From positions 124,001 through 188,000 of IMG/VR virus record IMGVR_UViG_3300044680_000280: DNA of 64,000 bases; one strand, 5' to 3'. The translations under genes were made by a program, and so were the position numbers. Positions 20,140 through 35,302 of the stretch are shown here, one piece after another. Within the stretch, counting starts at the first letter, position 1, and each line of letters opens with the position of its first letter. The notes beneath the pieces were generated by a model. That model ran no database searches and had not been told where the DNA came from. It worked only from the letters and a program-made list of their open reading frames with translations.

Positions 20140-20694
20140 TTACAAGGAAGTTGACCCCAAAGGACGCTTCGCGTGGTCCACGGGAACGACATCTTTCGTC
20201 AAGAAGGCATAAAGGTCCTGCGGAGTGGTGTTCTTTGCGATAAGGGCGTCCGCACCGGGGTACTTGCTTACCTGAAGCACGAATACAATGGCTTCCGAGC
20301 AAAACATTGCCCGTTGCTCATGCAGTGGGTTCCGAATCTTGAACTTAAGCCATCGCCAGGTACGCTCTAGCCATCTTTCGTAGACGACAACGGCCTCCCC
20401 GAGGAGGCCGCCCACGTCATACGAACCCCCGAGCCACCCCATAGCCCGAATCACCCCATCTTCAACGGGGTACGGTAGAGTGACTAGCGACACAAGGTGA
20501 TTACCAACCGTATACCCCTCGTAAGGAATCAAGTGGTACCCCTGCAAAACCGCCTCAAGCACCCACTTTTGTTGACCGTAAAACGCTGTCCCGGGGTCCA
20601 AAAGGAGCCAACAGTGACTAATCGTGGATCCGGTAAACCATTGAATGATCTTGGAAAGCCAGGTGTTCGAATTTGAGAATCCTACGCTGATCAT
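20140..20694 (-). CDS. Permuted papain-like NlpC/P60 (YiiX/YebB-type) enzyme
   Basis: ISHCWL (His) precedes LGGSYD and MFCSE (Cys), the circularly permuted order. ATG at 20694 coupled to the upstream TGA. Confidence 0.78.
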   Translation of the reverse strand: MISVGFSNSNTWLSKIIQWFTGSTISHCWLLLDPGTAFYGQQKWVLEAVLQGYHLIPYEGYTVGNHLVSLVTLPYPVEDGVIRAMGWLGGSYDVGGLLGEAVVVYERWLERTWRWLKFKIRNPLHEQRAMFCSEAIVFVLQVSKYPGADALIAKNTTPQDLYAFLTKDVVPVDHAKRPLGSTSL

Positions 20695-21836
20695 TCTGTC
20701 TCCACTATGCAGTAGAACGTTGCGGCCGCCGCCGTGCCCGTGAAGGGGACGTCGTGCTGGAGCTTGATTTTTACATACATTCCGCTTGCCGACTCGATGA
20801 CAAGAGCCGACTGATAGTTCCAGGAAAGGATGACGTGAGGAGTGTTCAATCCGCGCCAAGAAGAGCCGCCAAGAGCCGGATACGTGGGATAGGACAACTG
20901 GGCGTCGTTCTGGTAATCGTTCATCGTCTTGTAATTGAGACTGTTCCCCAACGGAATGACTGTTCCAGTGGGCACGGCCCCCGAGGTCACGAGTTCTGGG
21001 GCAAAAAAGTCTACTATACCGTAGAGCTGGAAGGTTGTGGTGTCCGTAATGCCGATGTCCGTTGTGAACTGGACCTCAGCGGAGTCAATGCTCAGGTTCG
21101 TCCCTGAGTTCGGTTTGATAATGAACGAGGAATCCACCATATAGTGGTATGTGACGGTAACGACATCGGTCGGCTGATTTGCCGCGAGAAAGTGGATGAT
21201 CCCGTTCTTGTAATCGATCGTGTAGTCCCCGCCCGTACCGTAATGCGGATCCTGTTCCGTCTTCTGGGTCCCATTCACGTAAACGCTGACTCGGTAGGAC
21301 TGATTATTGCTGTCGACTAGGTAGTCCTCCCCAGTCAGTTTACCGTGGTAACTGTCAATGAGAGTTTGCTTAGAGGTCGCATAGTTGAGGTGCGTACCAT
21401 CATCGGTTGCGGTTTCCGCCGTGATGAGAACTGAGCTACCGTACCAAGTTGTGGGATCCGTCCAATCGTGCGAATAAAGAGTGGCGCGAACAACGCTCGT
21501 TTTCTCAGAGGCCACTCGGATACGCCCGTCGGCCAACCTGGGAGCCACGGTCTGGTTAGAACTCGTATGGTAATTGGTTAAAAAGTCAGTTGTGTCAGTG
21601 TCGTTTTGAGCCTGGGAGTAATCAGAATCAAACTGGAAAGTAGGAGACACTGACGAGAACACCAAGAGGCATTTGTATGCGATGTCGTCGTCAAAAGCGA
21701 AGACACAGTAACTGTCAACTTGGGTGATGTATTGTACGGACAAGTTCTTAGCTGTGCAGATCGCCTTGAAGTCGGGCCACCGTAGGGTGACGACCGCCGA
21801 ACTGTTGAAATGGATTTGTTGCGCGTAGGTGGTCAT
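20691..21836 (-). CDS. Fibre-associated structural protein (381 aa)
   Basis: Likely ATG at 21836 (MTTYAQQI; ATGA overlap with the fibre stop); DYTIDYKNGIIHF beta-module. Confidence 0.6.
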   Translation of the reverse strand: MTTYAQQIHFNSSAVVTLRWPDFKAICTAKNLSVQYITQVDSYCVFAFDDDIAYKCLLVFSSVSPTFQFDSDYSQAQNDTDTTDFLTNYHTSSNQTVAPRLADGRIRVASEKTSVVRATLYSHDWTDPTTWYGSSVLITAETATDDGTHLNYATSKQTLIDSYHGKLTGEDYLVDSNNQSYRVSVYVNGTQKTEQDPHYGTGGDYTIDYKNGIIHFLAANQPTDVVTVTYHYMVDSSFIIKPNSGTNLSIDSAEVQFTTDIGITDTTTFQLYGIVDFFAPELVTSGAVPTGTVIPLGNSLNYKTMNDYQNDAQLSYPTYPALGGSSWRGLNTPHVILSWNYQSALVIESASGMYVKIKLQHDVPFTGTAAAATFYCIVETE

Positions 21837-24685
21837 TCGAAGTACCCGTTGATGAATATGGTGCCACGAACGACCCCTGTAGTCGGACCATAGAGGTGTT
21901 TGACCAAGATGAGGAAGTACTTCCCAGGTTGTACAACGATGGGTGCGGTTAGAGTTTGGGTAATAGGTGATCCTGTAAAGATGGTGCCCACGGCGGAGCT
22001 CGCCGGTGCGGTAAAAATGCCCAAAACGTATCGTTGACCTGTAGCCGTACTCGGATTGTTGGAGTTGGCCACCATGAAGCTCCACTCCTCAATGTTGATC
22101 GTCGCCCCTAAAACCGTCGTGACGAACGGTTGGGGCATGTAAATTTCTGTCACATACAAGGTATAAGGTGACGGTACCTGATACCCGAATACCCCGTAAA
22201 GCGACTCAGACCCGCTCGTTGTCGCTATATCGAAGTCACCACCCAAGTACGCATAATTGACGCCGGTCGTGGTAGGAGCCGCAGAAGAGGGAGCAGTGGT
22301 GAAAACCTGAGAGGTCTGTAAGAACGTTGTTGGGTCAATGCCCGCTGAGCGTCCGGTTCCTGCTAATTGATGTGCCCACGGTTTGGACTCATCGATGTCA
22401 TAGCGCCAGGACTGAAAACCGGTGATCTTCGTTTCAGGAGCCGCACTCGCCGTACCAGTCGTATACACACGGGCAAAAGCAGGCAAGTGGGAGACTGCGG
22501 CCGCAACGTTTGGAGTGGCTAGGGTTATAGGAGCAAAGTAGTCCACAAGGGGAACGCCAGTCTCTGACTCAATGATAAATCGTGCGCCCCCGTCCTCGAC
22601 CCACACAAAAAACAGGTAGTAGGTAGTACCCACGAGGGTACCAAGAGAGGAGGAGACGGTCTCTGTCCCGTTGTTGGACGTAACCGCGAAAATAGTGCCT
22701 GACGAGTTAAAGCGAAAGAAGGCTCCGTTACTGACGACCGCAGTTGTGCCCGACGGAGCTCCGAAACCCAACTCACTGACAGAGTTGGTTCCTTGAGTGA
22801 CGAGTGCTTTGAACGAGCACCCGGTCGGAGCCTGGTTAAACAATGCAAATTGGCTGTTGCTTGTGATAATCGCATAGGTTGTCGTAGTCGTGATGGCACC
22901 ACTGTTCAGTGTGAGTAGACCACCACTCTGACCTATTGTCATCGTTCCAGTACTTTGAGTCCAAACCCACGTGTTGATGTTGCTTCCCTCAACGGGGTCG
23001 AAACCAACAAGCGTTTGGTACCCTGGAGTGAGGTGGCCTAAACGATTTGCTCTCGCTACCCTACCGACTCCCGAGGACTGACCAATAATGGGGACGCCTG
23101 TCTGGGCACCCGCTGTCATTGCCGTACGGTCGACAACAGATCCTAGATTACGTACCAACCCCGCCGAATCAATTCCGGATACAGGCACTGGGTTAGTCAA
23201 TGGGGTGTTGGCGACAGGAGTGGAACCCTGAACAGGAATAGGCTCCCCGTTGAAGTCCTGATCTATCTGAAGTCGATCGATATCCTCAAAAAAGGCGTAG
23301 TCAACTGAAAGAGTGGTGCTCGATGCGGCTGTCCCAGTATTTCCAATATCGGCGATAATGAAAAGTGGTGTGTACGGAGTGGGGAGGTGGATCGTATTGA
23401 TTGCCACCACGATCCCATCGATGGACAGGGTCGCCTGGTTAGCTGAAAGTCCAATGTTGTACGTGTGGTAAGTCGCCGTGGTTCCACCATTCGGCAGTGT
23501 AACCGTCGTGCTCTGGGTGTCAGTGACCGCACTAGTGTATGCTGTTGTGAAGGTAACCTGAGTATTGTTTGTACCGCTAAATCCAATGACGGCCTGCTGA
23601 TTTATAGAGGTGGGGTTGTCTACCAATCCAAGGTATGCCGATTGGTTCGCAATACGTTGAGACAATGAGGCGTAGAATTGAATGTTGAACGGGAGGTAGT
23701 CCGAAAGGCTCACAATGGATCCAGAAGACCCGCTCGTGGTACCCGTGGCAATACTCACAATCGAACTGGCCACTGTGATTGAGCCGGCCGAAGGAGTCGT
23801 AGTCTTCCAATTGCTGACGACACTCGTTGCGCCGCCCGTTGTACCCGTATAGTTGGTGTCGAGAATAAGCTGTGTTGCCGAAACAACATATGAGACCTGC
23901 GCGTAGAGGGTCTCAGAATCAGCAGACTTTTTGACGTACTGACCCATTTTGATCTGGGTCGTGAAAGAAGTCCCAGAGCCAGTAACCGTAGTCGAACCGT
24001 TCGTAAACGTGACGGTACCCGTTAGGGTTGTCGTAAGAGCCGTGCCCGTGAAGTCGTCCCGAAAACTGCCCTCATCGGTAATAACCGGACCTCGGGTCTC
24101 AAGATTCCCATAAGCGTCAATAGTTGGGGTGCCATTTCCCGAGATGTAAGATCCTGGATCTGGGTACGAACTTGATGCCTGCTGATCTATCTCGGTAATG
24201 TTCGCGTTACTGTTCGGGGAAATGGTGACCACGAGGGCGTCGTCCGTAGCCAGTGGAGCCACACCCGATGGCTTAACCGCAACTGGCCCGTTACCAGCAT
24301 TATCGAAAATACCGGTTGTCCCAGCAACCTTGTTGACGAGAGTCGCGTACACGCCGCCGAAGGACGGCGTCGTACCCGTAACCGTCCAGGTGATCTGGAA
24401 GCAGCTTCCTCTGGCCATGGCCAGAGATATGATCTGTGTGCCCACCGCCGTGATGGCCGTCCCCACGGCTGAGCTACTAATGGCGGTTGTAAAGTTCCCG
24501 GGGTCAACTTCCTGAATCGTAAACGTAATGGTAGGGGTCGTCCCTGAAACGGTGCCCGTAACATTGACGATAAGGACGACTTCTTTTGCCCCTACATCTT
24601 CGAATACGCCTGACGACCCCGACGCCGTAACCGTGGCGTTTGCCAGTACAACTTGTCTATAGTCGTCGATTACGACTTCCATCAA
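21833..24685 (-). CDS. Tail fibre/adhesin-like protein A (950 aa)
   Basis: Thr/Ser/Gly-rich, multi-module; N- and C-terminal domains paralogous to 26356-29166 and 29214-30155. Confidence 0.7.
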   Translation of the reverse strand: MMEVVIDDYRQVVLANATVTASGSSGVFEDVGAKEVVLIVNVTGTVSGTTPTITFTIQEVDPGNFTTAISSSAVGTAITAVGTQIISLAMARGSCFQITWTVTGTTPSFGGVYATLVNKVAGTTGIFDNAGNGPVAVKPSGVAPLATDDALVVTISPNSNANITEIDQQASSSYPDPGSYISGNGTPTIDAYGNLETRGPVITDEGSFRDDFTGTALTTTLTGTVTFTNGSTTVTGSGTSFTTQIKMGQYVKKSADSETLYAQVSYVVSATQLILDTNYTGTTGGATSVVSNWKTTTPSAGSITVASSIVSIATGTTSGSSGSIVSLSDYLPFNIQFYASLSQRIANQSAYLGLVDNPTSINQQAVIGFSGTNNTQVTFTTAYTSAVTDTQSTTVTLPNGGTTATYHTYNIGLSANQATLSIDGIVVAINTIHLPTPYTPLFIIADIGNTGTAASSTTLSVDYAFFEDIDRLQIDQDFNGEPIPVQGSTPVANTPLTNPVPVSGIDSAGLVRNLGSVVDRTAMTAGAQTGVPIIGQSSGVGRVARANRLGHLTPGYQTLVGFDPVEGSNINTWVWTQSTGTMTIGQSGGLLTLNSGAITTTTTYAIITSNSQFALFNQAPTGCSFKALVTQGTNSVSELGFGAPSGTTAVVSNGAFFRFNSSGTIFAVTSNNGTETVSSSLGTLVGTTYYLFFVWVEDGGARFIIESETGVPLVDYFAPITLATPNVAAAVSHLPAFARVYTTGTASAAPETKITGFQSWRYDIDESKPWAHQLAGTGRSAGIDPTTFLQTSQVFTTAPSSAAPTTTGVNYAYLGGDFDIATTSGSESLYGVFGYQVPSPYTLYVTEIYMPQPFVTTVLGATINIEEWSFMVANSNNPSTATGQRYVLGIFTAPASSAVGTIFTGSPITQTLTAPIVVQPGKYFLILVKHLYGPTTGVVRGTIFINGYFE

Positions 24686-24709
24686 CCTCAGACAACTATA
24701 GAAAGAAGG

Positions 24710-26287
24710 TTACTCACAACCAGTCGATGGAGCCGTCGTACAACTAGCCGCAGTCGTCACACTCTTCGTCGCAATGCAACTCAGGTAGTTCTTGTAGACC
24801 GTGCCGTTGGAACTGGGCGTAAAGCTTGTGGTATCATTGAGCAATTGGGGATTGTTTGAATCGGACCAAGACCAAGCAAAGAATCCGATGTCTTGTGTGT
24901 CCGCCCAACTGAGGAAAAGAGGCCACCAAGCCGAACCCGTAGACGTATCGCATGCGTAGTATCCAGTCTCACCTACAACGATGGGATACCCTGCCGAAAG
25001 CACCGCTTGAGCTCCAAGTCCCGATGATGGGTCACAGAGCTGACTGAAGGTGGAAGCAGGGTTCGTGGTGCAGCCGCCCTGGTCGTCGTAAACGTGCCAG
25101 CTAGCCGCGAGGTTGTTCGCAGGGTCAGTCGGTAGGTATTGGGTCCAAAGGTCAAGGTTGGACGAGTAGCCAGGACCCCCCAGAATGATGAGATTGTTGG
25201 CTCCTGCGGTTCGAACGGTGTTGACGAGCGTTTGCCAACCAGCAACCGCGAAGTTCATCATGGGGCAGGACCCGCTCGACGCGGCCGTACTTCCATTCAG
25301 AAGACACGCGAACTGCTGAGCTTCGGTACCCGAGCTCATATTGGGCTCGTTGAACAAGTCGAAGATTACGTTCCCATTGCTTGCAAAAAGCCCAGCAACC
25401 TGTTGCCAGAACGTAATGCTGTGATCGACGTCTGGCATCAAACCCTGATTGAGAGCCTGAGTAGTTCCAGGGGCTGACATGTGAAGGTCGAGGATGACGT
25501 ACATGCCTTCCGACGTGATGAGATTCACCGCCTGCTGAATTGGGGTCTCGTAGTTAACCCCACCAACGCTCGCATCCGTACCATTGATACCAAGCCAGCA
25601 ATCCTCATTCAGAGGAATACGAACGGCATTGATACCCCAAGACTGCATCGCTGTAAGGCTGTCTTGAGTGAGGGGAGACGGTCCTCCTTCGGGGGACAGT
25701 ACAACGGCCGGTGGACCCCACGTAAGGCAGAAGTTCTCCGAGCCAGACTCGTCAACTCCATGAAGAGTGACCTTGTTGCCATTCGAGTCGGCAACATATC
25801 CATGCGCCCCGCCCACGCCCACGACCGCATGTAGGCCACTTGAGGGTGGGAGGCTAGACGAAGATATTGAGGTCGTCGTTGTACTGGTCGACGAAGACGT
25901 TGAGGTCGAAGTCGAAGAAGCGGTAGAGGTCGAAGTAGAGTGAGAGTGCGTATGGGAGCTACTCGAACTCGTCGAGGTTCCAACAATGGTCGATGAGTTG
26001 GAACTAGAAGTCGAACTGGGGGACGATGTCAGCGTCATCGACGATGATGAAGTTGACGGGGAACTCACTGAGGTCGATGAGTGAGTGTTTGACGACGTTG
26101 ACGTCGTGCTGGAGCTGGACTCTACCGTATACGACGTCGAGGACGTCGACAGAGTTGACGAGGTCGTGGTGGACTCCGTAGAGGTTGAGGACTCGGGCGG
26201 TGGTGTGCCCCCGCCGCAGGCTACGACACAGAGCAGCCCCACAGTGAATAGAGATACGAATTGACGACCAATGCGGGACCAAACCAT
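24710..26287 (-). CDS. GH5 glycoside hydrolase lipoprotein (cellulase-like) with Ser/Thr linker
   Basis: Signal peptide and lipobox VVAC; about 120-aa S/T linker; then AVRIPLN, ILDLH, LFNEP (acid/base Glu), WHVY, VGETG (nucleophile Glu), FAWSW. Confidence 0.9.
   Translation of the reverse strand: MVWSRIGRQFVSLFTVGLLCVVACGGGTPPPESSTSTESTTTSSTLSTSSTSYTVESSSSTTSTSSNTHSSTSVSSPSTSSSSMTLTSSPSSTSSSNSSTIVGTSTSSSSSHTHSHSTSTSTASSTSTSTSSSTSTTTTSISSSSLPPSSGLHAVVGVGGAHGYVADSNGNKVTLHGVDESGSENFCLTWGPPAVVLSPEGGPSPLTQDSLTAMQSWGINAVRIPLNEDCWLGINGTDASVGGVNYETPIQQAVNLITSEGMYVILDLHMSAPGTTQALNQGLMPDVDHSITFWQQVAGLFASNGNVIFDLFNEPNMSSGTEAQQFACLLNGSTAASSGSCPMMNFAVAGWQTLVNTVRTAGANNLIILGGPGYSSNLDLWTQYLPTDPANNLAASWHVYDDQGGCTTNPASTFSQLCDPSSGLGAQAVLSAGYPIVVGETGYYACDTSTGSAWWPLFLSWADTQDIGFFAWSWSDSNNPQLLNDTTSFTPSSNGTVYKNYLSCIATKSVTTAASCTTAPSTGCE
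25850..26200 (-). repeat. Low-complexity Ser/Thr-coding tract
   Basis: Encodes the SSTSTESTTTSSTLS...SSSS linker; boundaries approximate. Confidence 0.8.
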
Positions 26288-26355
26288 GACGAATACCTCC
26301 CAGGTACAACGGGAATCGGATTTGATCTGGGTCTGGTATGGTCCTAAAGTCGGTC

Positions 26356-29166
26356 TTACTGGAGCATTGCGTCGAGAGTCACCATGCCTCGGTTGATCTG
26401 ACCAGCCGTGACGTTTCCGAGCGGAACGCGAAGAATGACTTGGACGTACTTACCACCAAAGCACACGATGGGAACCTTGGGGGTGTACTGAATGATTCCA
26501 GGGGTGAAGGGGTCCCCGAGGTTGGCGGATTTGGGTGCCTGCTGCATTCCGATGGCCGTACGAACTGGTGGGTTAGCGCCAGCCGTAGCCAAGGATGCGG
26601 CGCTGGATCCGACGGCGAGACCCCACTGAAGAAGTGTCGGCGTCGTCGTGCTTTGGGCGCCCATCAGGAATGTCGCTATCTGAATGCTCCAAATGACGAG
26701 TGTGAAGCCCGTCGGAACCTGATACGCAAAGAGCAGATAGTCCGTTTCAGCGGATGCAGGGGTGTTAAAGGCGAAGAGTCCGCCAAGCGTTGTGTATGCC
26801 GCCGTAGTGTTTGATAGCGACGTCGTCGCAATGGTGGACGGTGCCGTGCTGTTCGAGAAATTCTGTAGCTGGACACCAGTCAGGGGATCTGCAATACCGC
26901 TGCGAGAAGCAGACGCGAGCTGTTCGCCCCAAGTCGAGTTCGTCGAAAGATCGAGCTGCTCAACCGTAACGGACGTCAGAATGGCGTTGGCCGCGGTTCC
27001 AGGAGCTGTACCGCCGTTGTACACACGAATGGCAGCGGGAATGTGTCCCGTTTGAATGAGAGCGCCCTGAGTGGCCGGAGTTTGCAACGTGGTCGTTGCA
27101 AAGACCGAGTTATCCCAGTTTAGAATGTCGAGTCGAGCAATCGTACCGTAGACGTAGATGACGAACGTGTAGTAGTTCGCAGCCGTCAGAGCGGTCGCAA
27201 TGACCGACGTGGTTTCCGTTCCGTTGAAGTTGATGACGAGCTCTTGTGTACCCGCTGAAGTGATTCGGAAGAAAACTCCGTTAGTAGGGGCCGCGTTCGT
27301 AGCAGCGGCGAGGAACCCGAGCTCAATCGTGGCGTTCGTCTGAGCAGTGAGCTTTGCCTTAATGCGAGTCTGAACGGCAAACTCACCGTTGAGGAGGAAG
27401 GACTTATTCGACGTCAGAATCGAATACGCGTTCGCAGTCACGACGCTCGTAGAGTTCATGCTGAACGAAGTCTGAGTCTGTGCCTGAACAAGGCCGGACG
27501 TGGATTGAGCCCAACGAACCGTATTGACCGTCGTTCCATCGAAGGTGTCGAGGAATTCCAGACTTTCGGAACCCACTCGAAGACGATTGGCTTCACCGAA
27601 GGCAAACTCACCAACGAGGGCGTTGTCCGTCAGAGGGGCGAACAGAACCGGGTTACCGACAATGGCAGCGCCGCCAGCGGCAGGACCAACAACAATCGGT
27701 CGGCCCGAAGTGTCCGTTGAAAGGGCACGAGCAAGCGTACCGTCGGAGCCGCCGATGACCGCAACAACAGGCGGAGTCGCGGAAGCAACCGGCGCCTGAA
27801 AAGGGACTGCGGGATCGTACATGTCCGAGGCACGTAGGGTGACGTTTGCTGTACCCGACGTATACGCGGTAACCGTGACACGAGTGAGACCTGAACCGGT
27901 ATCCCCAAGGATCGACTTTGCTGTGGCTCCGTTAGCCGAGGCGAAGACAACAGTCTGCGTGATGGCGAGAGTCGTAGGATCCTGGAAGAAAGTGTTGCTC
28001 CAGGTTGTACCGCCGTCATACGAAATCTGCGGGGTGATCGTTCCGATCAGGGTTCCCGCCGCGAGCTGCATGCCCACTCCCGACAAGCCCGCCGTGGTGA
28101 TTTGAACCGCTGCGTTCAAAGCTCCGAGGGCGCCGGTTGCCGTGACATCGGAAGCCGAAAGGGTGATGGAGTTGTTAGGCGAGATTGCAACAACAAGGGC
28201 TGGGTCGGCTGCAACAGCCGCCGTGTTGGGCGCTTTAACCGCAACTGGACCGTGCGTACCGTCCGTGATTTCAAAAGGCCACGCACCCGAGAGAGCGGCG
28301 GCTGTGCCCTGGTTGACAGCACCGATGGTGTTCGAACCAGTCGGAAGTGGAGCTCCAATTTCAACGACCTGGGCACCAACACCCGAATCGAGAGTGACCG
28401 TAGCTGTACCCGTGGCAACCGTATTACCGAGAACGCGAACCTGCTGGTATCCAGCACTCGGGATTTCCCAGTTACCGTTCGCCGTCGTTGATGTAACTTC
28501 AACGCCCGTAACCGGAACGATGGCATTGACGGCTACCCAGTTGGTACCGTCGACTGTCGCCTGGAAGGACAGGGTTCCAGTCCAAGTGCCAGTGACCTCC
28601 ACACCAGTCGAGGCGGAGCCTTGCGTGTTGACAGCAACGTTCTGCGTGCTCGTGATTGTACCGGTAGACGTACGGTCCGTATATGTGATGGTAACGGGAA
28701 CCGAAGTACCGTTCGTGATACCCTGAATCGTGATGGCCGTGGCACCAGGAGAACCGGCCGTACCGAAGGCGGGAACACCGCTTGTCCCATAGAGTTCCGA
28801 GGTGCCGGCAAGTTTGTTGACAAGCGTCGCGTACACGCCGCCGAAGGACGGCGTTGTACCGCCGACCGCCCAAGAAACCTGAACGCAGGAGGCCACCATC
28901 GTCGGAATGGTGATTGTCTGAGTCCCGACTGCCGTGATCGCAGCGCCCGAAAAGGTTGGACCGATCAGCGTCGTTTGATTACCAGGATCAACCTCTTGAA
29001 CCGTGAACGTCAGGGTCGGAGTCGTACCCGAAACGGTTCCTGTGACGTTGATAACGAGAACCAGTTCTGCGGCACCGTAGCCAGTGAAAACGGCGGACCC
29101 GCTGGTCGTAACGGTCTGATTCGCTAGGACAATGGTCCTAAAATCCTGAATTGCTACTTCAGCCAT
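26356..29166 (-). CDS. Tail fibre/adhesin-like protein B (936 aa)
   Basis: N-terminal about 120 aa nearly identical to fibre A; lectin-like central domain; shared C-terminal ETDY..F.YQVP domain. Confidence 0.7.
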   Translation of the reverse strand: MAEVAIQDFRTIVLANQTVTTSGSAVFTGYGAAELVLVINVTGTVSGTTPTLTFTVQEVDPGNQTTLIGPTFSGAAITAVGTQTITIPTMVASCVQVSWAVGGTTPSFGGVYATLVNKLAGTSELYGTSGVPAFGTAGSPGATAITIQGITNGTSVPVTITYTDRTSTGTITSTQNVAVNTQGSASTGVEVTGTWTGTLSFQATVDGTNWVAVNAIVPVTGVEVTSTTANGNWEIPSAGYQQVRVLGNTVATGTATVTLDSGVGAQVVEIGAPLPTGSNTIGAVNQGTAAALSGAWPFEITDGTHGPVAVKAPNTAAVAADPALVVAISPNNSITLSASDVTATGALGALNAAVQITTAGLSGVGMQLAAGTLIGTITPQISYDGGTTWSNTFFQDPTTLAITQTVVFASANGATAKSILGDTGSGLTRVTVTAYTSGTANVTLRASDMYDPAVPFQAPVASATPPVVAVIGGSDGTLARALSTDTSGRPIVVGPAAGGAAIVGNPVLFAPLTDNALVGEFAFGEANRLRVGSESLEFLDTFDGTTVNTVRWAQSTSGLVQAQTQTSFSMNSTSVVTANAYSILTSNKSFLLNGEFAVQTRIKAKLTAQTNATIELGFLAAATNAAPTNGVFFRITSAGTQELVINFNGTETTSVIATALTAANYYTFVIYVYGTIARLDILNWDNSVFATTTLQTPATQGALIQTGHIPAAIRVYNGGTAPGTAANAILTSVTVEQLDLSTNSTWGEQLASASRSGIADPLTGVQLQNFSNSTAPSTIATTSLSNTTAAYTTLGGLFAFNTPASAETDYLLFAYQVPTGFTLVIWSIQIATFLMGAQSTTTPTLLQWGLAVGSSAASLATAGANPPVRTAIGMQQAPKSANLGDPFTPGIIQYTPKVPIVCFGGKYVQVILRVPLGNVTAGQINRGMVTLDAMLQ

Positions 29167-29213
29167 GTGGTTCCCTCACATGACTTGGTCCAAAAAGACT
29201 TTAGACGTCACGA

Positions 29214-30155
29214 TTACTCGAAGTAACCGTCAATCATACAAAACCCCCGAATCTGTTGTCCAGGAGTTGCGTTAGACATTGGGATCCTGAGTACGATATG
29301 CAAGTACTTTGTAGTACTGATCACAATTGGAGTGTCTGGCCTGAAGTTGACGGGAGACGAACTAAAACTATCTCCTATTCGAGAGGACTGAGCCGCGGTC
29401 ATCGTTCCGAGTGGGAGAAAAGCAGGGCCGCCTGATGCCAAAGATGGATTCGTAGCGTTCGCCCCTATAGCCCACTGCAAAATAGTTGGCTGTGCACTAC
29501 TAGACTGACCGAATATCTGAGCCCCAATCGAAATAGATCGCAAATACAGGTTGGAGCCCGTAGGAACCTGGTATCCAAAAAGGGCGTAGTCCGTCTCACT
29601 GCCAGAGATGGAGTTAAACTGCCAAAGACCCCCAAGAGTTGAGTAACTGGGTACCGTATTTGAGAGAGTAGCGAGGGACGGGGCGGAGTTGTTTGTGTAG
29701 TTCGCGGTCTGAACCTGCGACACGGGGGTAACGATTGTGGATCGATTCGTCCCAGCCGCCTCAGGCTGAGGATTGCCCAGAGCCGCGACAGAGACGTTGA
29801 CCCCAGAAAAAGACGGCGTCGTGCCCGTGAGTGTCCACGTAACAACGAAGGTGCCCGCGCCTTGAACTGGCACTGAAAACGTGCCAGCAAGAGTGCCCGT
29901 AATGGGGCCCGTACTAACCGAACCGCCTATTTGCGTCGTTTGGTCGATCGGATCGACCTCGGTCATTGTAAACGTGATCGTCGGAGAAATGCCCGTCGGG
30001 GCATTTGTGATATTGACGATCAGAGAAACTTGGGGAGAACCGTAGCCTGAAACAATCGCGCTTCCATTAGCCGTGAGTGTGACAGCGGACTGAACGATCT
30101 GTTCGTTCGGATCCGCAAAGGTCGGCTGGGGGGCTAGGAAGAATATGCCGGGCAT
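29214..30155 (-). CDS. Short fibre paralog C (313 aa)
   Basis: N-terminal and C-terminal domains of fibre B joined without the central region. Confidence 0.7.
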   Translation of the reverse strand: MPGIFFLAPQPTFADPNEQIVQSAVTLTANGSAIVSGYGSPQVSLIVNITNAPTGISPTITFTMTEVDPIDQTTQIGGSVSTGPITGTLAGTFSVPVQGAGTFVVTWTLTGTTPSFSGVNVSVAALGNPQPEAAGTNRSTIVTPVSQVQTANYTNNSAPSLATLSNTVPSYSTLGGLWQFNSISGSETDYALFGYQVPTGSNLYLRSISIGAQIFGQSSSAQPTILQWAIGANATNPSLASGGPAFLPLGTMTAAQSSRIGDSFSSSPVNFRPDTPIVISTTKYLHIVLRIPMSNATPGQQIRGFCMIDGYFE

Positions 30156-30865
30156 TAGACGTTCCTGACGATATTCTCACTCGTCACGGAGTTGCCGGAA
30201 TATGTATACGTTATGGTAGCCTGAGCAACGACCGTGAGCCCCGTGGCCGTATCGTAAACCGTCCTGACCTCCTGGGTCACCTTATTCCCAGTGTACGTAT
30301 AGTTGATGGTCTTGATGACGTTAGAATTCGAAGTCTGAGACCATTTTTCCTGAGTGACCCGCCTATTCACACGAGTGACCGAATACGTTGTTCCCAACGA
30401 GACGGGCTCGTTGTCCAGAAGCTCATGATTCGAGATGTCCGTGAGAGCCTGTTGGGCTACGGTTGAACTCGTAACGGTTTGTTCTTCTGTATTGAATCCG
30501 ATATAGCTCAACCCTGACGGGTACATGAAGGTGACATTTCCTCCTGTCGATGAGGGAATGATTTCTACCGTAGTAAAACTCGTGTCCGTGGGAATCGTAG
30601 CCACGTGATACGTCCCATCCGCGCCAGAAGTACCGCTGAGAACCGCTATGTCCCCGGGAGATACCGGATGGTCCTTCGTAAGAAGGATTCCCTCTCCGTC
30701 TGAGGCGAGATTCACGACAACCGTGCTCGTACCGTGAGTTGTCGAAACTAAGGTCGTGGTAAGGTATACCGCCGACCCGTCGGACACCAACTGAGCGGCA
30801 TCGACGAAGTCCGAATGGACTACGTCAGTCGCTTGTATTCCCGGTAGAGTTACTGACGGCGGCAC
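30155..30865 (-). CDS. Structural protein (236 aa)
   Basis: GTG start; beta-rich; C-terminal TINYTYTGNKVTQE repeats. Confidence 0.55.
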   Translation of the reverse strand: MPPSVTLPGIQATDVVHSDFVDAAQLVSDGSAVYLTTTLVSTTHGTSTVVVNLASDGEGILLTKDHPVSPGDIAVLSGTSGADGTYHVATIPTDTSFTTVEIIPSSTGGNVTFMYPSGLSYIGFNTEEQTVTSSTVAQQALTDISNHELLDNEPVSLGTTYSVTRVNRRVTQEKWSQTSNSNVIKTINYTYTGNKVTQEVRTVYDTATGLTVVAQATITYTYSGNSVTSENIVRNV

Positions 30866-31313
30866 TTACGTTCGACCCTTCATCCGCCACTGGGGTTACC
30901 TTACGCGGCCGTCCCCTCCTTCGACCGGGCGGTGGAGCCGTAGAAGGTGTAGGCTCGGGAGCGCTCGCTTGAGTCTCACGGAGAGCCTCTTGGCGCTCTT
31001 GTTCTCGTGCCCTCTCTTCTTCGAGTCTTCGCTCCTCCAGTACTACGTACCCATTCACAACCGAAAAAAGGATACTTGCCATGGAGGAGAAGGCATGGCC
31101 CTGAGCCTCGATTGCCGCCGCCTGGGTCCTCAGGGTTTGAGCCTGAGCGAAACAGCTTTGCTTGCGATTCTCGGTCTCCTGGTGAAGCTGAAGAATCGTC
31201 TGCTGATACAGAGCAAACGTTTCGGGATTCAACCTCTGAGATCTCTGGAGATCCAGCAATCTCGTCCGTATCCGAATCAGGTCGTTTTGGGGGTTGTTTG
31301 ATGCGGGGTCCAT
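30825..31313 (-). CDS. Coiled-coil protein with AT-hook motif
   Basis: Long helix, then PPPGRRRGRPRK. Confidence 0.6.
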   Translation of the reverse strand: MDPASNNPQNDLIRIRTRLLDLQRSQRLNPETFALYQQTILQLHQETENRKQSCFAQAQTLRTQAAAIEAQGHAFSSMASILFSVVNGYVVLEERRLEEERAREQERQEALRETQASAPEPTPSTAPPPGRRRGRPRKVTPVADEGSNVSAAVSNSTGNTSD

Positions 31314-31559
31314 TTATTTCATTCCTTTCAATGTGATCTCACCTCGAACTAAGGCATTCGCCAAAATGAGGCATGGTTCGCAGTAAATACCAGCAACAAG
31401 GTGTCCTTTGGAGGTCACCTTGAAAAAACGCGTGGGTTCCTCCGGCTTACTCTCACCATTTCTACGGAACATGGTAGGAGCGAAGTGCCCAGAACTACAC
31501 CAGTTCTGGGCGGGAGGAACCTTCTGCTCATCGATACTGAGATCGGCTTTGGGTAACAC
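31314..31559 (-). CDS. Hypothetical protein (81 aa)
   Basis: Abuts the downstream ATG; TTG/GTG-type start uncertain; CEPC motif. Confidence 0.45.
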   Translation of the reverse strand: MLPKADLSIDEQKVPPAQNWCSSGHFAPTMFRRNGESKPEEPTRFFKVTSKGHLVAGIYCEPCLILANALVRGEITLKGMK

Positions 31560-31577
31560 TGGGTTACCCTACACCGT

Positions 31578-34427
31578 TTAGAGTACCCAGTAATTGACGT
31601 GTTGGCCGGCCTTGATGGCCCAGTACGGAGTAATCGAGGTCGTGCTGGTCTCGGCATAGTCGTCACCGTTGGCGACCGTGCCGGGGTCACGGAGAACACC
31701 GTTCCAGTGAACGATGAGACCCCTACCGTTATTGGAGCCGTCCAGAACGTACGTCGCGCCGCCCGGAAGGGTGTGTGCCGTATTTGCCGGAAGAGCCGAA
31801 CCGAGGCGTTCAATGTACCGGGTAACCGTCGCCGAGGAGATGGCGTTCGAAAGGGCCTGAAGAGAGGCCGTGATGGTCGAGCCGGAGGTGAGGTACGGAC
31901 CCGTGAAGGTGTCGTCACCGATCTGCTGGTTGAGAATGTTGAGCGCCGAGATAACCGTGTCCCCTGCGCCGCCCGGAAGGTACGAGAACGGGAAGTAGTT
32001 GCCCGTGTTCGTAAGAGAACCCGAAATGTTCGTATCCGGGTAGGTCGTTCCGATCTGGCTGAGGATGTTGTCGATCTCCTGCTGAAGGAACGCGTCCGAG
32101 ACGAGTCCAAGAGCCGGGGTCGTTCGAAGACAGTTGACGTCGAGTAGGTCTCCTCGCTCGCCCTTACCGTAGATGAAATTGACGGTCGTAGCCTGACTCG
32201 ACTCCCAAACGTACGGAACAGCCTGCGTGCTGATATTTCCGCCGACCGGAACCGAGTAGAAGTTGATTTGAACCGAGTTCGGGCTGGTCGAAGTTCCCTC
32301 GGTCGTGACACCGAAGACCTTGTTGCCTTCGTTGGTCGTATTCGTCGCGGCCGACGCAGCGTAAGTGGTACCCGAGTAGTTCGTCGTCAGAACGATGTTA
32401 CCGCTCGAAACCGAGAGGATCGTGTACTGTGTGTCAGTACCGTCTGACGTGAAGGTAATCTTGTTACCCGCGACCAGGGCGCTAACCTGAGAAGCTGTAG
32501 TCGGAACTGTGGCCGAACCGTTGGTGATAGCGAACGTTCCGCTCAGAGCCGTTCCGCCGATGACGAAGAGCTCCTCGTCCGTCGCCGTGTTGACGATACC
32601 GACGTAGCAGCTCTCAAAGTCCCCAACGTATGGAGGGGTGTCGAAACACGGAATACCCGTCAGAGATTCAATGTTCGCGTGCGGAAGATTGCCAGTCGAC
32701 GTGATGACCACGTTCGTGTCGGTCGAAGCAACCGCCGCCGAATAGTAAACCTCGTTGACGTTGAGAACCTTCGCGTCGAGGGGGACCATGTTGGCCAGGT
32801 TCTTCGGAATCGGAACGAGGTTCAGGTCCGGACGGAGATACGTCGGAACGGGCTGGTCATAGTTGACGCCCTTGATCGCCGTTCGGTCCGTACGCTCGAA
32901 ATCGAGGTCGTCGTTGATGACGTACGGGTTGCGTTCGGTCCACATGGTACCCGTGTCACCAGAGACGGCCGATGCATTGGCAACGGACACCTGAGTCGCA
33001 CTTGTGTACGAAACGATGAGGAACGTTCCGTTGTTGCCAGCGTTCGTGAATCCACTCATCTGTAGGAAGTGACCCACAGAGTTCTGGGTCATATTCGCAA
33101 GACCCGTAATGGGAACGATACCCGCGGAGGGGGTGCCGGTTACAGGAGCGCTACCCGAATTGAAGCTCGTCCACGCGATGTTTCCCGAGTTCGAATCTGG
33201 ATAGTATCCGTTGGGATCCGACACAACCGCGGTGCCCGAAGCGGACGAACTGACTGTGAAAACGCCGTTGTTGCCGGCTTCTCCCGCGAGGGCAAGAAGA
33301 AGAAGGCTTCCCGTGGGAGCCGTTCCCGTCAAACCGCCGATGGCCAGCGCGTATGGGGTTGGAGTCATGACGGCCGTGGTCGCGGAGTTCGTCGTCCCCG
33401 TGTAATCGGTCGTCAGGGTGATGGTCGTACCGCCCGTGATCGAAAAGATCGTGTACTGAACAAGGGGGCGAGTCGCAAAAACGATCGTATCACCCGCAGA
33501 AAGGACACCCGTCTGCGAGGTCGACGCCGTGACAACGTTCGACTCGTGAGTTACCGCGAACGTTCCATACAGCGGAAGAGAAACCGCTTCCGCTGTGTAC
33601 GTGCCCGATGTTCCCCCATATGTCGACGTCAGGGTAATGGCCGTACCCGCAACCGTGAGGACCGTGTAGGTCACACCGAGAGCGGTGCCGTCATCGAACG
33701 AAACGTTGTCGCCTGGGAAGAGAAGACCATTTTGCGACACGGAAGCCGTGACCGATGCCGAACCGTTCGCAACGAGGAATGTCCCCGACAGAGTAACGAG
33801 GTTCGAGACCAACGCAGCAGTGGTCGCCACATTCGGCGTTCCCGCGTAAGCCACCGTCAAAGTGAAGGTCGCACCAGTAACCGTCGCAACCGTGTAGGCG
33901 ACTCCTGGCTGAGAAGCGAAAACGACGACGCTACCTGGCACCAGGATGCCAGTCATCGAAACCGAAGCCGTCACCGTAGTCGACGCACTGACCGCAAACG
34001 TTGTTGGAGTGTACAGCGGGGCGCCGCTATTGATCGCGGCAAGGGGAATCACTTCCGCCGTGGTCGAAGCGTTCGTCGTACCCTTGTATTCCGTAGCAAG
34101 GGTGACCGCAGTGCCCGCAACCGACGCAACCGTGTACTGAACGCCCGGTTGAGAAGCGAAAACGACGACTTCACCTGCATACAGAAGACCCGCTTGGGTC
34201 GTCGACGCCGTAACCGACGTCGAGTCGTTCGCCACCGAAAAAGTTCCCGTTAGGGTCGGAGTTGTGAAACCCGTGATGGTGGCACCCGTACCCGAGTTGA
34301 GAACAACGGGCATACCGAGACCCGCCGTCTCATCCAATAGCCACCGATTGTTGTTTTGATACGCGGATCCAGCGACGTCGAAGTCCTGCTGAACCGAATT
34401 GAAACGGAAATACGGTGTGTAGGTCAT
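31578..34427 (-). CDS. Large repetitive virion protein (949 aa; fibre-like)
   Basis: Five copies of an about 70-aa GTF-x-V...TAS..Q.G.L..G..V.F.S..G..YTV..V.GT..TL...Y.GT module; high-GC3 codons. Confidence 0.75.
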   Translation of the reverse strand: MTYTPYFRFNSVQQDFDVAGSAYQNNNRWLLDETAGLGMPVVLNSGTGATITGFTTPTLTGTFSVANDSTSVTASTTQAGLLYAGEVVVFASQPGVQYTVASVAGTAVTLATEYKGTTNASTTAEVIPLAAINSGAPLYTPTTFAVSASTTVTASVSMTGILVPGSVVVFASQPGVAYTVATVTGATFTLTVAYAGTPNVATTAALVSNLVTLSGTFLVANGSASVTASVSQNGLLFPGDNVSFDDGTALGVTYTVLTVAGTAITLTSTYGGTSGTYTAEAVSLPLYGTFAVTHESNVVTASTSQTGVLSAGDTIVFATRPLVQYTIFSITGGTTITLTTDYTGTTNSATTAVMTPTPYALAIGGLTGTAPTGSLLLLALAGEAGNNGVFTVSSSASGTAVVSDPNGYYPDSNSGNIAWTSFNSGSAPVTGTPSAGIVPITGLANMTQNSVGHFLQMSGFTNAGNNGTFLIVSYTSATQVSVANASAVSGDTGTMWTERNPYVINDDLDFERTDRTAIKGVNYDQPVPTYLRPDLNLVPIPKNLANMVPLDAKVLNVNEVYYSAAVASTDTNVVITSTGNLPHANIESLTGIPCFDTPPYVGDFESCYVGIVNTATDEELFVIGGTALSGTFAITNGSATVPTTASQVSALVAGNKITFTSDGTDTQYTILSVSSGNIVLTTNYSGTTYAASAATNTTNEGNKVFGVTTEGTSTSPNSVQINFYSVPVGGNISTQAVPYVWESSQATTVNFIYGKGERGDLLDVNCLRTTPALGLVSDAFLQQEIDNILSQIGTTYPDTNISGSLTNTGNYFPFSYLPGGAGDTVISALNILNQQIGDDTFTGPYLTSGSTITASLQALSNAISSATVTRYIERLGSALPANTAHTLPGGATYVLDGSNNGRGLIVHWNGVLRDPGTVANGDDYAETSTTSITPYWAIKAGQHVNYWVL

Positions 34428-34447
34428 TGAGAGTCTCCGACGGGGGG

Positions 34448-34972: not shown

Positions 34973-34984
34973 GCGTCAAACCAC

Positions 34985-35302
34985 TCAGGCAACAATGTAG
35001 TTGACGACTAGTGAATCGTTAGAGTACGGGGCGTACGCTAGAGTTATGGTGTCGAATCCTGTACCCGATCCGCCGCTTTCCGAGACCGTGTAGTCCCATA
35101 GAAGTGTTTGCAGAACACCGTTGTAGTAGACCTCAATGGCAAAAAAAGGGACGTTCTGAAGAAACTTGTCCCCAAAAGGTACCGTAAATACCTGATTAGA
35201 TTGATCTAATAGTCCTAGAGGGGTGACCTCAGTTCTGTACCTTGCAACCGAAATGAAAAGTTGCTGGGCAGCTTGAAGCGAGAGGTAATTGACAAGATAC
35301 AC
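34985..35302 (-). CDS. Structural protein (105 aa), paralogous module
   Basis: DYTVSESGGSGTGFDTI; GTG start with AAGGAGG SD. Confidence 0.65.
   Translation of the reverse strand: MYLVNYLSLQAAQQLFISVARYRTEVTPLGLLDQSNQVFTVPFGDKFLQNVPFFAIEVYYNGVLQTLLWDYTVSESGGSGTGFDTITLAYAPYSNDSLVVNYIVA

What the first reader, a model, noticed from the sequence alone, without database searches (positions are those of the whole stretch)
24710..26287. Cell-type GH5 lipoprotein inserted between duplicated fibre genes
Seen: intact GH5 catalytic motifs (NEP, ETG), a lipoprotein signal (VVAC-GGG) and a long S/T linker, flanked by two fibre paralogs. This architecture is that of a membrane-anchored bacterial enzyme, not a virion depolymerase. 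Inference: a host-derived gene expressed late and displayed on the infected cell, possibly degrading cellulose-like biofilm to aid release, or an auxiliary metabolic gene.
Basis: partly seen in the sequence, partly recalled or inferred. Interest (0 to 1): 0.65.

Follow-up and report, generated by a model that had tools for sequence, protein, structure and literature searches.

The report
Bacterial lipoprotein cellulase captured by huge phage
A very large peat-soil phage carries an intact copy of a membrane-anchored, cellulase-type enzyme taken from myxobacteria, inserted exactly between two of its tail-fibre-like genes; this is a clean example of a known kind of virus-borne carbohydrate-degrading gene, not a new kind of system.

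Summary
Window 24710..26287 (-) encodes a 525-aa protein with four parts: a signal peptide with a lipobox (VVAC, Cys24), a 125-aa linker that is 75% Ser/Thr, a GH5 domain, and a Cys-rich tail. The GH5 domain scores Pfam E 1e-38, keeps all eight canonical residues, and gives an AF2 model of pLDDT 94.

About 50 relatives at 62-73% identity share this architecture. The four that can be named are Polyangiaceae/Myxococcales genomes, and the phage copy nests inside their clade.

The flanking genes are paralogs, and a third paralog lies upstream. In five related phage contigs the same module has the two flanking paralogs 13-45 nt apart with no GH5. The gene is therefore a lineage-specific insertion.

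Its GC and GC3 match the phage, not the donors. It departs from the family at only 4 of 142 invariant columns. The junctions appear in two separate assemblies, and a peat RNA-library contig crosses the start codon.

The public gene call of 312 aa is truncated.

Most likely this is an exported, lipid-anchored endo-beta-1,4-glucanase made by infected cells. Whether it serves nutrition or clears surface glycan is untested. It is a new member of a known kind (soil-virus GH genes).

The parts
24710..26287 (-). Full GH5 lipoprotein gene (525 aa, P0001). The stop codon is 24710..24712.
   Evidence: ORF and translation; Pfam PF00150. The public JGI gene call covers only the last 312 aa, starting at Met214. 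Residues 150-213 are conserved family sequence, so that call is truncated.
26296..26300 (-). Shine-Dalgarno GGAGG, 8 nt upstream of the ATG at 26287
   Evidence: Read directly from the sequence
26216..26287 (-). Signal peptide with lipobox (residues 1-24; V21-V22-A23-C24)
   Evidence: Sequence. Cys24 column is at least 90% conserved, and the signal is alignable to those of bacterial relatives, e.g. P0008 ..LWCVAACG. A rule-based scan flags it as one of only 2 lipobox candidates among 523 ORFs.
25841..26215 (-). Ser/Thr-rich linker (residues 25-149; 75% S+T)
   Evidence: Composition. It is the only S/T-rich stretch in the 406-kb record. It is not a simple tandem DNA array.
24713..25840 (-). GH5 catalytic domain plus Cys-rich C-terminal tail (residues 150-525). 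Acid/base E314 is at 25346..25348 and nucleophile E440 at 24968..24970.
   Evidence: Pfam; invariant residues; AF2 model with pLDDT 94 and pTM 0.93; Foldseek top hits are all GH5 endo-beta-1,4-glucanases.
26356..29166 (-). Upstream fibre-like paralog P0003 (936 aa)
   Evidence: Paralogy. Full-length orthologs at 62-68% identity occur in related phage contigs.
21833..24685 (-). Downstream fibre-like paralog P0002 (950 aa from the TTG, or 949 aa from the ATG at 24682)
   Evidence: Paralogy; weak PHROG tail-fibre match. Its counterpart in relatives varies from 545 to over 1419 aa.
29214..30155 (-). Third, minimal paralog (313 aa: the shared N-terminal domain plus the shared C-terminal domain)
   Evidence: blastp within the genome. 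Orthologs of 340-345 aa sit at the same position in relatives.
20140..35302 (-). 15-kb variable module that holds the paralogs and the GH5. It is absent from the closest large relative, G001.
   Evidence: Synteny: the G001 orthologs of w19479_20093 and w35324_35983 are adjacent. The same module without GH5 is present in L100-L104.

Best explanation
The gene is a horizontally acquired, fully intact copy of a lipoprotein endo-beta-1,4-glucanase (GH5) that is otherwise found in peat-dwelling Polyangiaceae-type myxobacteria. It was inserted into the 13-45-nt spacer between the second and third fibre-like paralogs of a huge phage. The record is 406.7 kb and a JGI contig that encodes the same protein is 463.5 kb.

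Inferred mechanism:
1. The gene is transcribed with the neighbouring structural genes and translated from its own GGAGG ribosome-binding site.
2. The precursor is exported by Sec, lipidated at Cys24 and cleaved by signal peptidase II.
3. The enzyme is held on the host envelope by its lipid. With Gly at +2 this is probably the outer membrane.
4. The roughly 125-residue Ser/Thr spacer lets the disulfide-rich catalytic domain reach beta-1,4-glucan outside the cell.

Favoured role: it duplicates the host's own surface foraging enzyme, raising sugar supply to the infected cell (an auxiliary metabolic gene, or moron).

Shown: identity, architecture, origin, insertion, intactness, and presence in several peat samples.
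Inferred: export, lipidation, substrate, timing and benefit.
For: Identity and fold:
- Pfam GH5 at E 1e-38.
- All eight canonical GH5 residues and ten Cys are invariant.
- AF2 model pLDDT 94.
- The top 50 PDB neighbours are beta-glucan-active GH5 enzymes, almost all endo-beta-1,4-glucanases (Xac0030, P. horikoshii EGPh, SdGluc5_26A), with TM 0.6-0.7.

Architecture: lipobox, low-complexity linker, GH5 and a ..TGCE tail are shared with 27 aligned full-length relatives.

Origin:
- The best genome hits are Polyangiaceae/Myxococcales MAGs at 65-71% identity; the next tier is 48% or less.
- The phage copy is nested in a 52-row clade (SH-aLRT 99) that includes those MAGs.
- Relatives lie in bacterial contexts, one beside RND efflux genes and one beside a GH6.

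Insertion:
- L100-L104 keep the same gene order, with the two paralogs 13-45 nt apart and no GH5.
- TerL relatives G001-G004 also lack GH5.

Residence and selection:
- GC is 55.1% and GC3 60.1%, against a phage mean of 55.4% and 62.7%. The donors have GC3 of 78-90%.
- Only 4 of 142 family-invariant columns differ, which is within the range of bacterial members.

Start site: GGAGG lies 8 nt before the ATG.

Reality of the locus:
- Contigs of 99 kb and 86 kb from two runs span it with no differences.
- A third peat study holds identical fragments.
- A peat metatranscriptome contig covers 26222-26377, across the start codon.

Precedent: an active GH5 from a bog virus (PMC6786970). Signal peptides were predicted in 5% of prophage CAZymes (PMC13507307).
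Against: - No enzymatic, localisation or expression-timing data exist.
- The RNA-library contigs could be DNA carry-over.
- The strict PROSITE lipobox pattern fails at position -4, which is Cys20. Only the relaxed [LVI][ASTVI][GAS]C form is met, and SignalP/LipoP were not available.
- No solved structure is close (best sequence E 2e-8, profile E 3e-12), so the substrate is inferred only from fold neighbours and from a GH6 next to a sister gene.
- A position inside a structural (presumably late) operon fits a nutritional role poorly.
- The donor MAG G005 carries two close copies of its own, so if the host resembles it the added benefit is unclear.
- Host identity rests on this one gene. Nothing else links the phage to Myxococcota, and the phage GC (55%) is well below that of Polyangiaceae (65-68%).
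Confidence: 0.55

Rival explanations
1. Receptor- or EPS-destroying envelope enzyme. The lipoprotein glucanase is encoded with the receptor-binding genes. It trims a surface or matrix beta-glucan of the infected cell, so that progeny are not trapped on debris or slime and the cell is not superinfected. It would be an enzymatic counterpart of the T5 Llp lipoprotein.
For: - It sits directly between fibre-like paralogs inside the operon.
- T5 Llp is likewise a lipoprotein encoded adjacent to and downstream of the RBP gene, and it prevents superinfection and adsorption to lysed-cell fragments (PMC9586334).
- Late co-expression with structural genes suits a release function.
- The fibre paralogs contain jelly-roll/ConA-like domains without the GH16 catalytic motif, i.e. 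possibly glycan-binding.
- The terminal branch is longer than the median (0.22 versus 0.09), which leaves room for a shift in specificity.
Against: - The putative host lineage displays 65-73%-identical enzymes of the same architecture. A surface glycan cleavable by this enzyme would then already be removed by the host's own enzyme.
- Five related phages with the same fibre module manage without it.
- It has no sequence relation to Llp or Cor (no PHROG hit).
- Fibre-gene boundaries are common sites for unrelated morons, so position alone is weak evidence.
Confidence: 0.22
2. Neutral passenger. The gene was picked up by illegitimate recombination at a permissive intergenic site and persists without benefit to the phage.
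For: - It is present in only one of six sampled phages with this module.
- No mobile-element scars or regulatory signals of its own were found beyond an RBS.
Against: - Its composition is fully ameliorated to the phage.
- The frame is intact across 525 codons, including the fragile low-complexity linker.
- Only 4 of 142 invariant columns have changed.
- The lipobox and all ten Cys are retained.
Together these argue for long residence under purifying selection.
Confidence: 0.12
3. Virion-associated depolymerase or lysis enzyme. The GH5 would be part of the particle (a tailspike-like glycanase) or would help break the envelope at lysis.
For: It lies next to fibre-like genes. Glycanases are common in phage tails.
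Against: - It carries an N-terminal Sec/lipoprotein signal and has no virion-anchor domain.
- Ten conserved Cys suggest folding in an oxidising compartment.
- There is no PHROG match.
- It is not related to the N-terminal domain shared by the three paralogs.
- GH5 enzymes are not known to cleave peptidoglycan (established knowledge of the family).
Confidence: 0.04

Closest known systems
GH5 lipoproteins of uncultured Polyangiaceae/Myxococcales from peat and soil (e.g. P0008 = L002 and L003 from MAG 'Polyangiaceae bacterium SPRUCE 23'; P0026 = L004)
   Same: The domain order is the same: lipobox signal, low-complexity linker, GLHAV..GH5 core, and a ..SCT..P.TGCE tail. Catalytic-domain identity is 65-73%. 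Catalytic residues and Cys are identical, and the signal peptides can be aligned.
   Different: The gene is encoded in a phage structural operon. GC3 is 60% rather than 78-90%. The linker is Ser/Thr-rich and is exceeded in length by only one of the 27 aligned relatives (P0008), whereas the relatives' linkers are Gly/Ser/Ala-rich. There is a small deletion at the conserved SPPN loop and three other departures from invariant columns.
Virus-encoded glycoside hydrolases of peat and soil, including the experimentally tested GH5 from a bog viral contig (Emerson et al. 2018, PMC6786970)
   Same: It is a host-derived GH5 on a viral contig from peat and a candidate auxiliary metabolic gene.
   Different: Fold neighbours here are beta-1,4-glucanases, whereas a later preprint describes the Emerson GH5 as an endomannanase. 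This gene carries a lipoprotein signal and a long linker. It sits in a phage of over 400 kb between fibre-like paralogs. It was not compared directly with the Emerson sequence, which was not available in the tools.
Phage envelope lipoproteins and morons encoded beside tail or RBP genes: T5 Llp (PMC9586334); Cor of T1-like phages (named in PMC9586334); lambda Lom and Bor (own knowledge)
   Same: These are phage-encoded, exported host-envelope proteins placed next to receptor-binding genes. Llp is a lipoprotein.
   Different: Those are small non-enzymatic proteins with no sequence relation to this one. This is a 525-aa glycoside hydrolase of clear cellular descent.
Solved GH5 endoglucanases: XacCel5A/Xac0030 (5hnn, 4w7u), P. 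horikoshii EGPh (3qho), SdGluc5_26A (5a8m), F32EG5 beta-1,3-1,4-glucanase (4x0v)
   Same: The fold is a (beta/alpha)8 barrel with the NEP acid/base and the nucleophile Glu aligned. Foldseek E is about 1e-15 and TM 0.6-0.7. These are also the best sequence hits.
   Different: Identity is only 17-23%. No CAZy subfamily can be assigned from these matches, and the extra Cys-rich C-terminal tail has no counterpart.

Membership tests
Glycoside hydrolase family 5 (Pfam PF00150, clan GH-A) | Profile match above the curated threshold | tested here: met
   133.6 bits against a cut-off of 23.5, E 1.2e-38, covering profile positions 5-271 of 272
Glycoside hydrolase family 5 (Pfam PF00150, clan GH-A) | Eight conserved residues, including the acid/base Glu in NEP and the nucleophile Glu | tested here: met
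   R223, H269, N313, E314, H398, Y400, E440 and W472 are all present and invariant in A1
Glycoside hydrolase family 5 (Pfam PF00150, clan GH-A) | (beta/alpha)8 barrel fold | tested here: met
   AF2 pLDDT 94 and pTM 0.93. At least 500 PDB matches at E <= 0.001, and the listed top hits are all GH5.
Glycoside hydrolase family 5 (Pfam PF00150, clan GH-A) | CAZy subfamily and substrate | tested here: inconclusive
   The nearest solved chains span several subfamilies at 17-23% identity. dbCAN was not available.
Glycoside hydrolase family 5 (Pfam PF00150, clan GH-A) | Hydrolytic activity | not testable with these tools
   Needs an enzyme assay
Bacterial lipoprotein (Sec/SPII substrate) | Positively charged n-region, uncharged hydrophobic h-region, lipobox [LVI][ASTVI][GAS]C with Cys at positions 15-35 | tested here: met
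   R5 and R8; h-region FVSLFTVGLLCVV; V21-V22-A23-C24
Bacterial lipoprotein (Sec/SPII substrate) | Strict PROSITE PS00013 pattern, pattern recalled from memory ({DERK}(6)-[LIVMFWSTAG](2)-[LIVMFYSTAGCQ]-[AGS]-C) | tested here: not met
   Position -4 is Cys20, which the pattern does not allow. The Polyangiaceae relative P0008 has the same Cys at -4.
Bacterial lipoprotein (Sec/SPII substrate) | Lipobox Cys conserved among homologs | tested here: met
   The C24 column is at least 90% conserved in 28 sequences
Bacterial lipoprotein (Sec/SPII substrate) | Lipidation, cleavage by LspA and membrane sorting | not testable with these tools
   Needs labelling, globomycin treatment and cell fractionation. 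SignalP/LipoP were not on hand.
Viral auxiliary metabolic gene | Lies on a bona fide viral genome with viral genes on both sides | tested here: met
   Portal, TerL and protease lie in the window. Genes on both sides of the module are syntenic with a 363-kb relative. The module itself recurs in five phage contigs.
Viral auxiliary metabolic gene | Cellular origin shown by phylogeny | tested here: met
   The gene is nested in a bacterial clade with SH-aLRT 99; quick search, midpoint root
Viral auxiliary metabolic gene | Alters host metabolism during infection | not testable with these tools
   There is only a trace in one RNA library
Superinfection-exclusion lipoproteins (Llp/Cor type) | Sequence or family relation to Llp/Cor | tested here: not met
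   No PHROG family matches P0001
Superinfection-exclusion lipoproteins (Llp/Cor type) | Lipoprotein gene adjacent to the receptor-binding gene | tested here: inconclusive
   Adjacency is met, but the receptor-binding role of the neighbours is not shown
Virion depolymerase / tailspike | N-terminal virion-attachment domain, no export signal, relation to phage structural families | tested here: not met
   It has a signal peptide, lacks the N-domain shared by the three paralogs, and has no PHROG hit

The most novel reading that the evidence does not exclude
The enzyme is not nutritional. It is an enzymatic analogue of superinfection-exclusion lipoproteins: a receptor- or matrix-destroying glucanase that the phage plants on the envelope of the infected myxobacterium. 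It is co-encoded with the fibres that recognise the same glycan, and it protects progeny from being trapped on debris or slime.
Probability: 0.2. Interest if true: 0.7.

Novelty: new member of a known kind. Interest (0 to 1): 0.4.

Why it matters
Most reported soil-virus CAZymes are short-contig annotations of uncertain viral origin. Few carry export signals: 5% in one prophage catalogue (PMC13507307).

This case is unusually well documented. The donor lineage, the insertion point, the intact catalytic and export features and the compositional amelioration are all resolved, in a phage of over 400 kb found in at least three peat samples. That makes it a good candidate for testing whether virus-borne glucanases act at the surface of infected cells in peat carbon turnover. 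It also gives a first, tentative host clue (Polyangiaceae-like Myxococcota) for a lineage of huge soil phages.

It further shows that the public gene call removed the very features (signal and linker) that define how the protein works.

Tried and rejected
Searches that found nothing close:
- Phage GenBank records by DNA: no match. By protein: one 23.5% hit.
- IMG/VR for close viral GH5: the best was 34% identity, in an unrelated high-GC contig with a different multidomain GH5.
- NCBIfam: nothing for P0001 or its neighbours.
- The big representative-protein search was not used, because the word search and family scans settled the protein.

The 'fibre' label could not be tightened:
- Pfam and PHROGs gave only a weak GH16 hit and a short tail-fibre match.
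- The AF2 model of the 313-aa paralog was mediocre (pLDDT 66).
- Foldseek returned only generic beta-sandwich hits at TM 0.2-0.3, plus one uncharacterised phage protein.
- No GH16 catalytic motif is present in the paralogs.

Other negative results:
- The 949-aa ORF at 31578..34427 is not a paralog of the fibres.
- Promoter and terminator scans were below the shuffled expectation.
- There are no flanking direct repeats of 7 nt or more at the insertion.
- The linker is not a tandem DNA repeat.

Host link beyond GH5:
- The phage portal was not found in five Myxococcota MAGs.
- In a sample of 201 genomes of the donor's order, only the donor MAG itself holds the close clade.

Rejected explanations:
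- Chimeric assembly, on the evidence.
- The truncated 312-aa gene model, on the evidence.

Compliance: read laying was given 5,001 letters. No alternative genetic code was used.
Full report
WHAT IS THERE

Window 24710..26287 on the minus strand is an uninterrupted 525-codon ORF. Its product has four parts.
- Residues 1-24 are a signal peptide, MVWSRIGRQFVSLFTVGLLCVVAC. It has two Arg, an uncharged hydrophobic core and a V-V-A-C lipobox.
- Residues 25-149 are a linker with 60 Ser and 34 Thr among 125 residues.
- Residues 150-~500 are a GH5 domain. Pfam PF00150 scores 133.6 bits against a cut-off of 23.5 (E 1.2e-38).
- The protein ends in a Cys-rich tail, ..SCTTAPSTGCE.

A GGAGG lies 8 nt upstream of the ATG. 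The protein is exceptional in its genome. Among 523 ORFs of the 406,734-bp record it is the only one with an S/T-rich stretch, and one of two with a lipobox-like N-terminus by a simple rule.

The public gene call for this locus (JGI 3300044797, contig Ga0480565_0000004, 463,523 bp) starts at Met214 and gives 312 aa. It also places three tiny ORFs on the opposite strand of the linker. That call is wrong. Residues 150-213 are highly conserved family sequence with many invariant positions.

THE FAMILY AND ITS ARCHITECTURE

A word-based search of 5.8 billion proteins found about 50 clusters at 62-73% identity over residues 155-525. The next tier drops to 48% and below. Twenty-seven full-length relatives align with the window protein from end to end (A1), and they share these features:
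- The lipobox Cys is at least 90% conserved.
- Each has a low-complexity linker, but the relatives' linkers are Gly/Ser/Ala-rich.
- All begin the catalytic domain with GLHAV.
- All end in ..TGCE.
- All eight canonical GH5 residues (R223, H269, N313, E314, H398, Y400, E440, W472) and ten Cys of the mature protein are invariant.

The phage copy kept all of it, including a signal peptide alignable to that of a Polyangiaceae relative (..LWCVAACG against ..LLCVVACG).

The strict PROSITE lipobox pattern fails at position -4, which is Cys. The commonly used relaxed pattern is met. SignalP was not available.

FOLD AND LIKELY SUBSTRATE

No solved structure is close by sequence. The best single-sequence hit is E 2e-8 and the best profile hit E 3e-12, to a beta-1,3-1,4-glucanase and to GH5_4/GH5_26-type enzymes.

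An AlphaFold2 model of residues 150-525 built on 29 sequences is confident (pLDDT 94, pTM 0.93). Its best PDB neighbours are all GH5 enzymes acting on beta-glucans, almost all endo-beta-1,4-glucanases (Xanthomonas Xac0030, Pyrococcus EGPh, fungal Cel5A, Saccharophagus SdGluc5_26A), at TM 0.6-0.7 and 17-23% identity.

The closest relative in the tree (P0007) lies beside a GH6 gene. I therefore read the enzyme as an endo-beta-1,4-glucanase. The subfamily and exact substrate remain open.

ORIGIN

In one genome per species (GTDB), the only close hits are four Myxococcota MAGs:
- two loci of 'Polyangiaceae bacterium SPRUCE 23' (a full-length match in one and 70% identity over the catalytic domain in the other);
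- a 'delta proteobacterium' whose protein NCBI names Polyangiaceae (67%);
- a Myxococcales MAG (65%).

Other phyla (Ktedonobacteria and others) begin at about 42%.

A maximum-likelihood tree of 89 rows (quick search, LG+C20) places the window protein inside a 52-row clade (SH-aLRT 99) that contains those MAGs. It is sister to two metagenomic proteins (96). Its terminal branch is 0.22, against a median of 0.09.

Relatives sit in ordinary bacterial contexts, next to RND efflux, aldose epimerase or GH6 genes. The clade is patchy. In a sample of 201 genomes of the donor's order, only the donor MAG has it.

The donor lineage is thus a narrow, uncultured, peat-associated Polyangiaceae-like group. 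That this group is also the phage's host is an inference from this gene alone. No phage portal was found in these MAGs, and the phage GC of 55% is below their 65-68%.

THE PHAGE AND THE INSERTION

The window carries a portal, a large terminase and a head protease. Nearly all genes in the first ~190 kb of the record are on one strand. Terminase relatives are viral records of 363 kb and 529 kb, so this is a huge phage.

Gene-by-gene comparison with the 363-kb relative G001 shows tight synteny on both sides of a 15-kb block, window 20140..35302. That block is missing in G001, where the flanking orthologs abut.

The block is not unique, however. Five other contigs carry the same module in the same order (L100 from a 529,550-bp ENA contig, plus L101-L104; GC 56-66%). 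The order is the orthologs of the 949-aa ORF, three small ORFs (reduced to fragments of these genes in L100), a 340-345-aa protein, a 936-942-aa protein, and then a third protein of 545 to over 1,419 aa.

These last three are paralogs of one another. In the window they are 29214..30155, P0003 and P0002. They share an N-terminal domain (43-63% identity) and a C-terminal domain (33-40%).

In all five relatives the second and third paralogs are separated by 13-45 nt and there is no GH5. In the window the same gap holds 68 nt, the 1,578-nt GH5 gene and 24 nt. TerL relatives G001-G004 also lack a GH5.

Given the bacterial nesting of the gene, a single insertion in the window's lineage is the simplest account. 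No flanking direct repeats mark the event.

INTACTNESS AND AGE

The gene's GC (55.1%) and GC3 (60.1%) equal the phage means (55.4 +/- 2.6 and 62.7 +/- 6.3). The Myxococcota homologs have GC3 of 78-90%.

At columns invariant in the other 27 family members, the phage copy differs at 4 of 142. That is no more than several of the bacterial members in the same leave-one-out test. The four changes are V237T, T259S and the SPPN loop.

The linker is not a simple DNA repeat. The gene therefore looks long-resident and under purifying selection. It does not look like a fresh capture, a decaying passenger or a mis-join with a bacterial contig.

IS THE LOCUS REAL, AND IS IT USED?

Logan contigs of two peat metagenome runs (99 kb and 86 kb) span window 23500-28500 with no differences. 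These runs may include the source sample. A third peat study holds 100%-identical fragments of both paralogs and of the GH5 5' region.

A peat metatranscriptome holds two identical 155-nt contigs. One lies inside the catalytic domain (24904-25050). The other covers 26222-26377, that is the signal-peptide codons, the 68-nt spacer and the last 22 nt of P0003. This is compatible with read-through transcription from P0003 and with translation from the upstream ATG. DNA carry-over in the RNA library cannot be excluded.

Promoter- and terminator-like sites in the module are fewer than in shuffled sequence, which is consistent with an operon.

HOW IT MOST LIKELY WORKS

Shown: a complete, conserved precursor of a lipid-anchored GH5 glucanase of myxobacterial descent lies in a phage structural-gene operon.

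Inferred: in the infected cell the precursor is exported by Sec and acylated at Cys24. With Gly at +2 it is passed to the outer membrane. In Myxococcus, Lys at +2 retains lipoproteins in the inner membrane (own knowledge); some relatives have Lys at +2, and this protein does not. The Ser/Thr spacer, possibly glycosylated, holds the disulfide-bonded catalytic domain away from the membrane, where it cuts beta-1,4-glucan.

On the role, I favour an auxiliary or 'moron' function that duplicates the host's own foraging enzyme. This is because the protein is preserved in exactly the host's form, the family is linked to cellulolysis, and peat viruses are known to carry active GH5 genes (PMC6786970).

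The main rival is a release or superinfection-exclusion role, by analogy with T5 Llp, a lipoprotein encoded next to the RBP gene (PMC9586334). It is attractive because of the position and the presumed late expression. It is weakened because the putative hosts already display near-identical enzymes, and because related phages with the same fibres lack the gene.

A structural or lytic role is unlikely given the export signal.

NOVELTY

Virus-encoded GH5 and other CAZymes in peat and soil are established (PMC6786970; bioRxiv 10.1101/2024.12.20.629349; PMC13507307, where 5% of prophage CAZymes had predicted signal peptides). So are phage-encoded envelope lipoproteins.

This is a new and unusually well-resolved member of that kind. 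The lipoprotein-plus-linker form, the huge-phage carrier and the precise insertion between fibre-like paralogs are noteworthy details rather than a new principle.

LIMITS

- The 'fibre' identity of the paralogs is not established.
- The tree was a quick search with a midpoint root.
- Taxon names come from four MAG titles.
- No activity, localisation or timing data exist.

Noticed in passing
window 20140..35302; G001:C1 about 193275-202368: The 15-kb module with the fibre-like paralogs is absent from the 363-kb relative G001. G001 instead has about 9 kb of extra sequence at a different site, between the orthologs of w14406_15803 and w15807_16190. The two phages appear to carry alternative host-range modules at different positions.
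   Followed up: partly
window 21833..24685 and its counterparts L101:7092-10139, L102:3893-8149, L103:6251-7888, L104:6953-11089: The third paralog keeps the shared N-terminal domain but varies from 545 to over 1,419 aa between related phages. The second paralog is conserved full-length (936-942 aa, 62-70% identity).
   Followed up: partly
L100:5684-11426: In the 529,550-bp ENA contig the P0002-type gene appears in pieces. The N-terminal domain is at 5693-6157 and the C-terminal region at 10158-11423, with about 2 kb of uncalled sequence between. This could reflect frameshifts of a long-read assembly, or a longer or rearranged gene.
   Followed up: no
window 31578..34427: The 949-aa ORF contains roughly 70-aa repeats that also occur in at least six other large ORFs of the record, e.g. 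G000 80206-86742, 123668-128143, 54306-57371 and 221976-224597.
   Followed up: no
window 34448..34972 and 34985..35302: These are two adjacent small paralogs (43% identity over 96 aa) at the upstream edge of the module. Both are represented in L100.
   Followed up: no
G000 whole record (window = 124001-188000): Genes in the first ~190 kb are almost all on one strand, and the remaining ~215 kb have mixed strands. IMG/VR labels the record 'provirus'. However, relatives are 363-529 kb viral records, and the position of the GH5 in the 463,523-bp JGI contig cannot be reconciled with a simple sub-interval of that contig. This suggests a circularly permuted genome of at least 463 kb rather than an integrated element.
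   Followed up: partly
window 25841..26215 (+ strand): The JGI annotation places three ORFs of 32-59 aa on the strand opposite the Ser/Thr linker. These are most likely artefacts of the truncated GH5 call.
   Followed up: yes
window 20140..20859: This 239-aa ORF at the downstream edge of the module has a weak PHROG hit to an 'enoyl-CoA hydratase/carnithine racemase-like' moron family (E 9.5e-10) and no Pfam hit.
   Followed up: no
window 40951..41023: A tRNA-Val (GAC) gene lies on the plus strand amid minus-strand structural genes.
   Followed up: no
G000 225171..225623: This is the only other ORF of the record with a lipobox-like N-terminus (MKHLFAATLVSLIAVSC..., 150 aa).
   Followed up: no
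L082:3347-9134: An unrelated high-GC IMG/VR contig carries two adjacent large multidomain GH5-like genes (1,087 and 818 aa). The second has an N-terminal hydrophobic segment. It was not established whether this region is viral or host flank.
   Followed up: no
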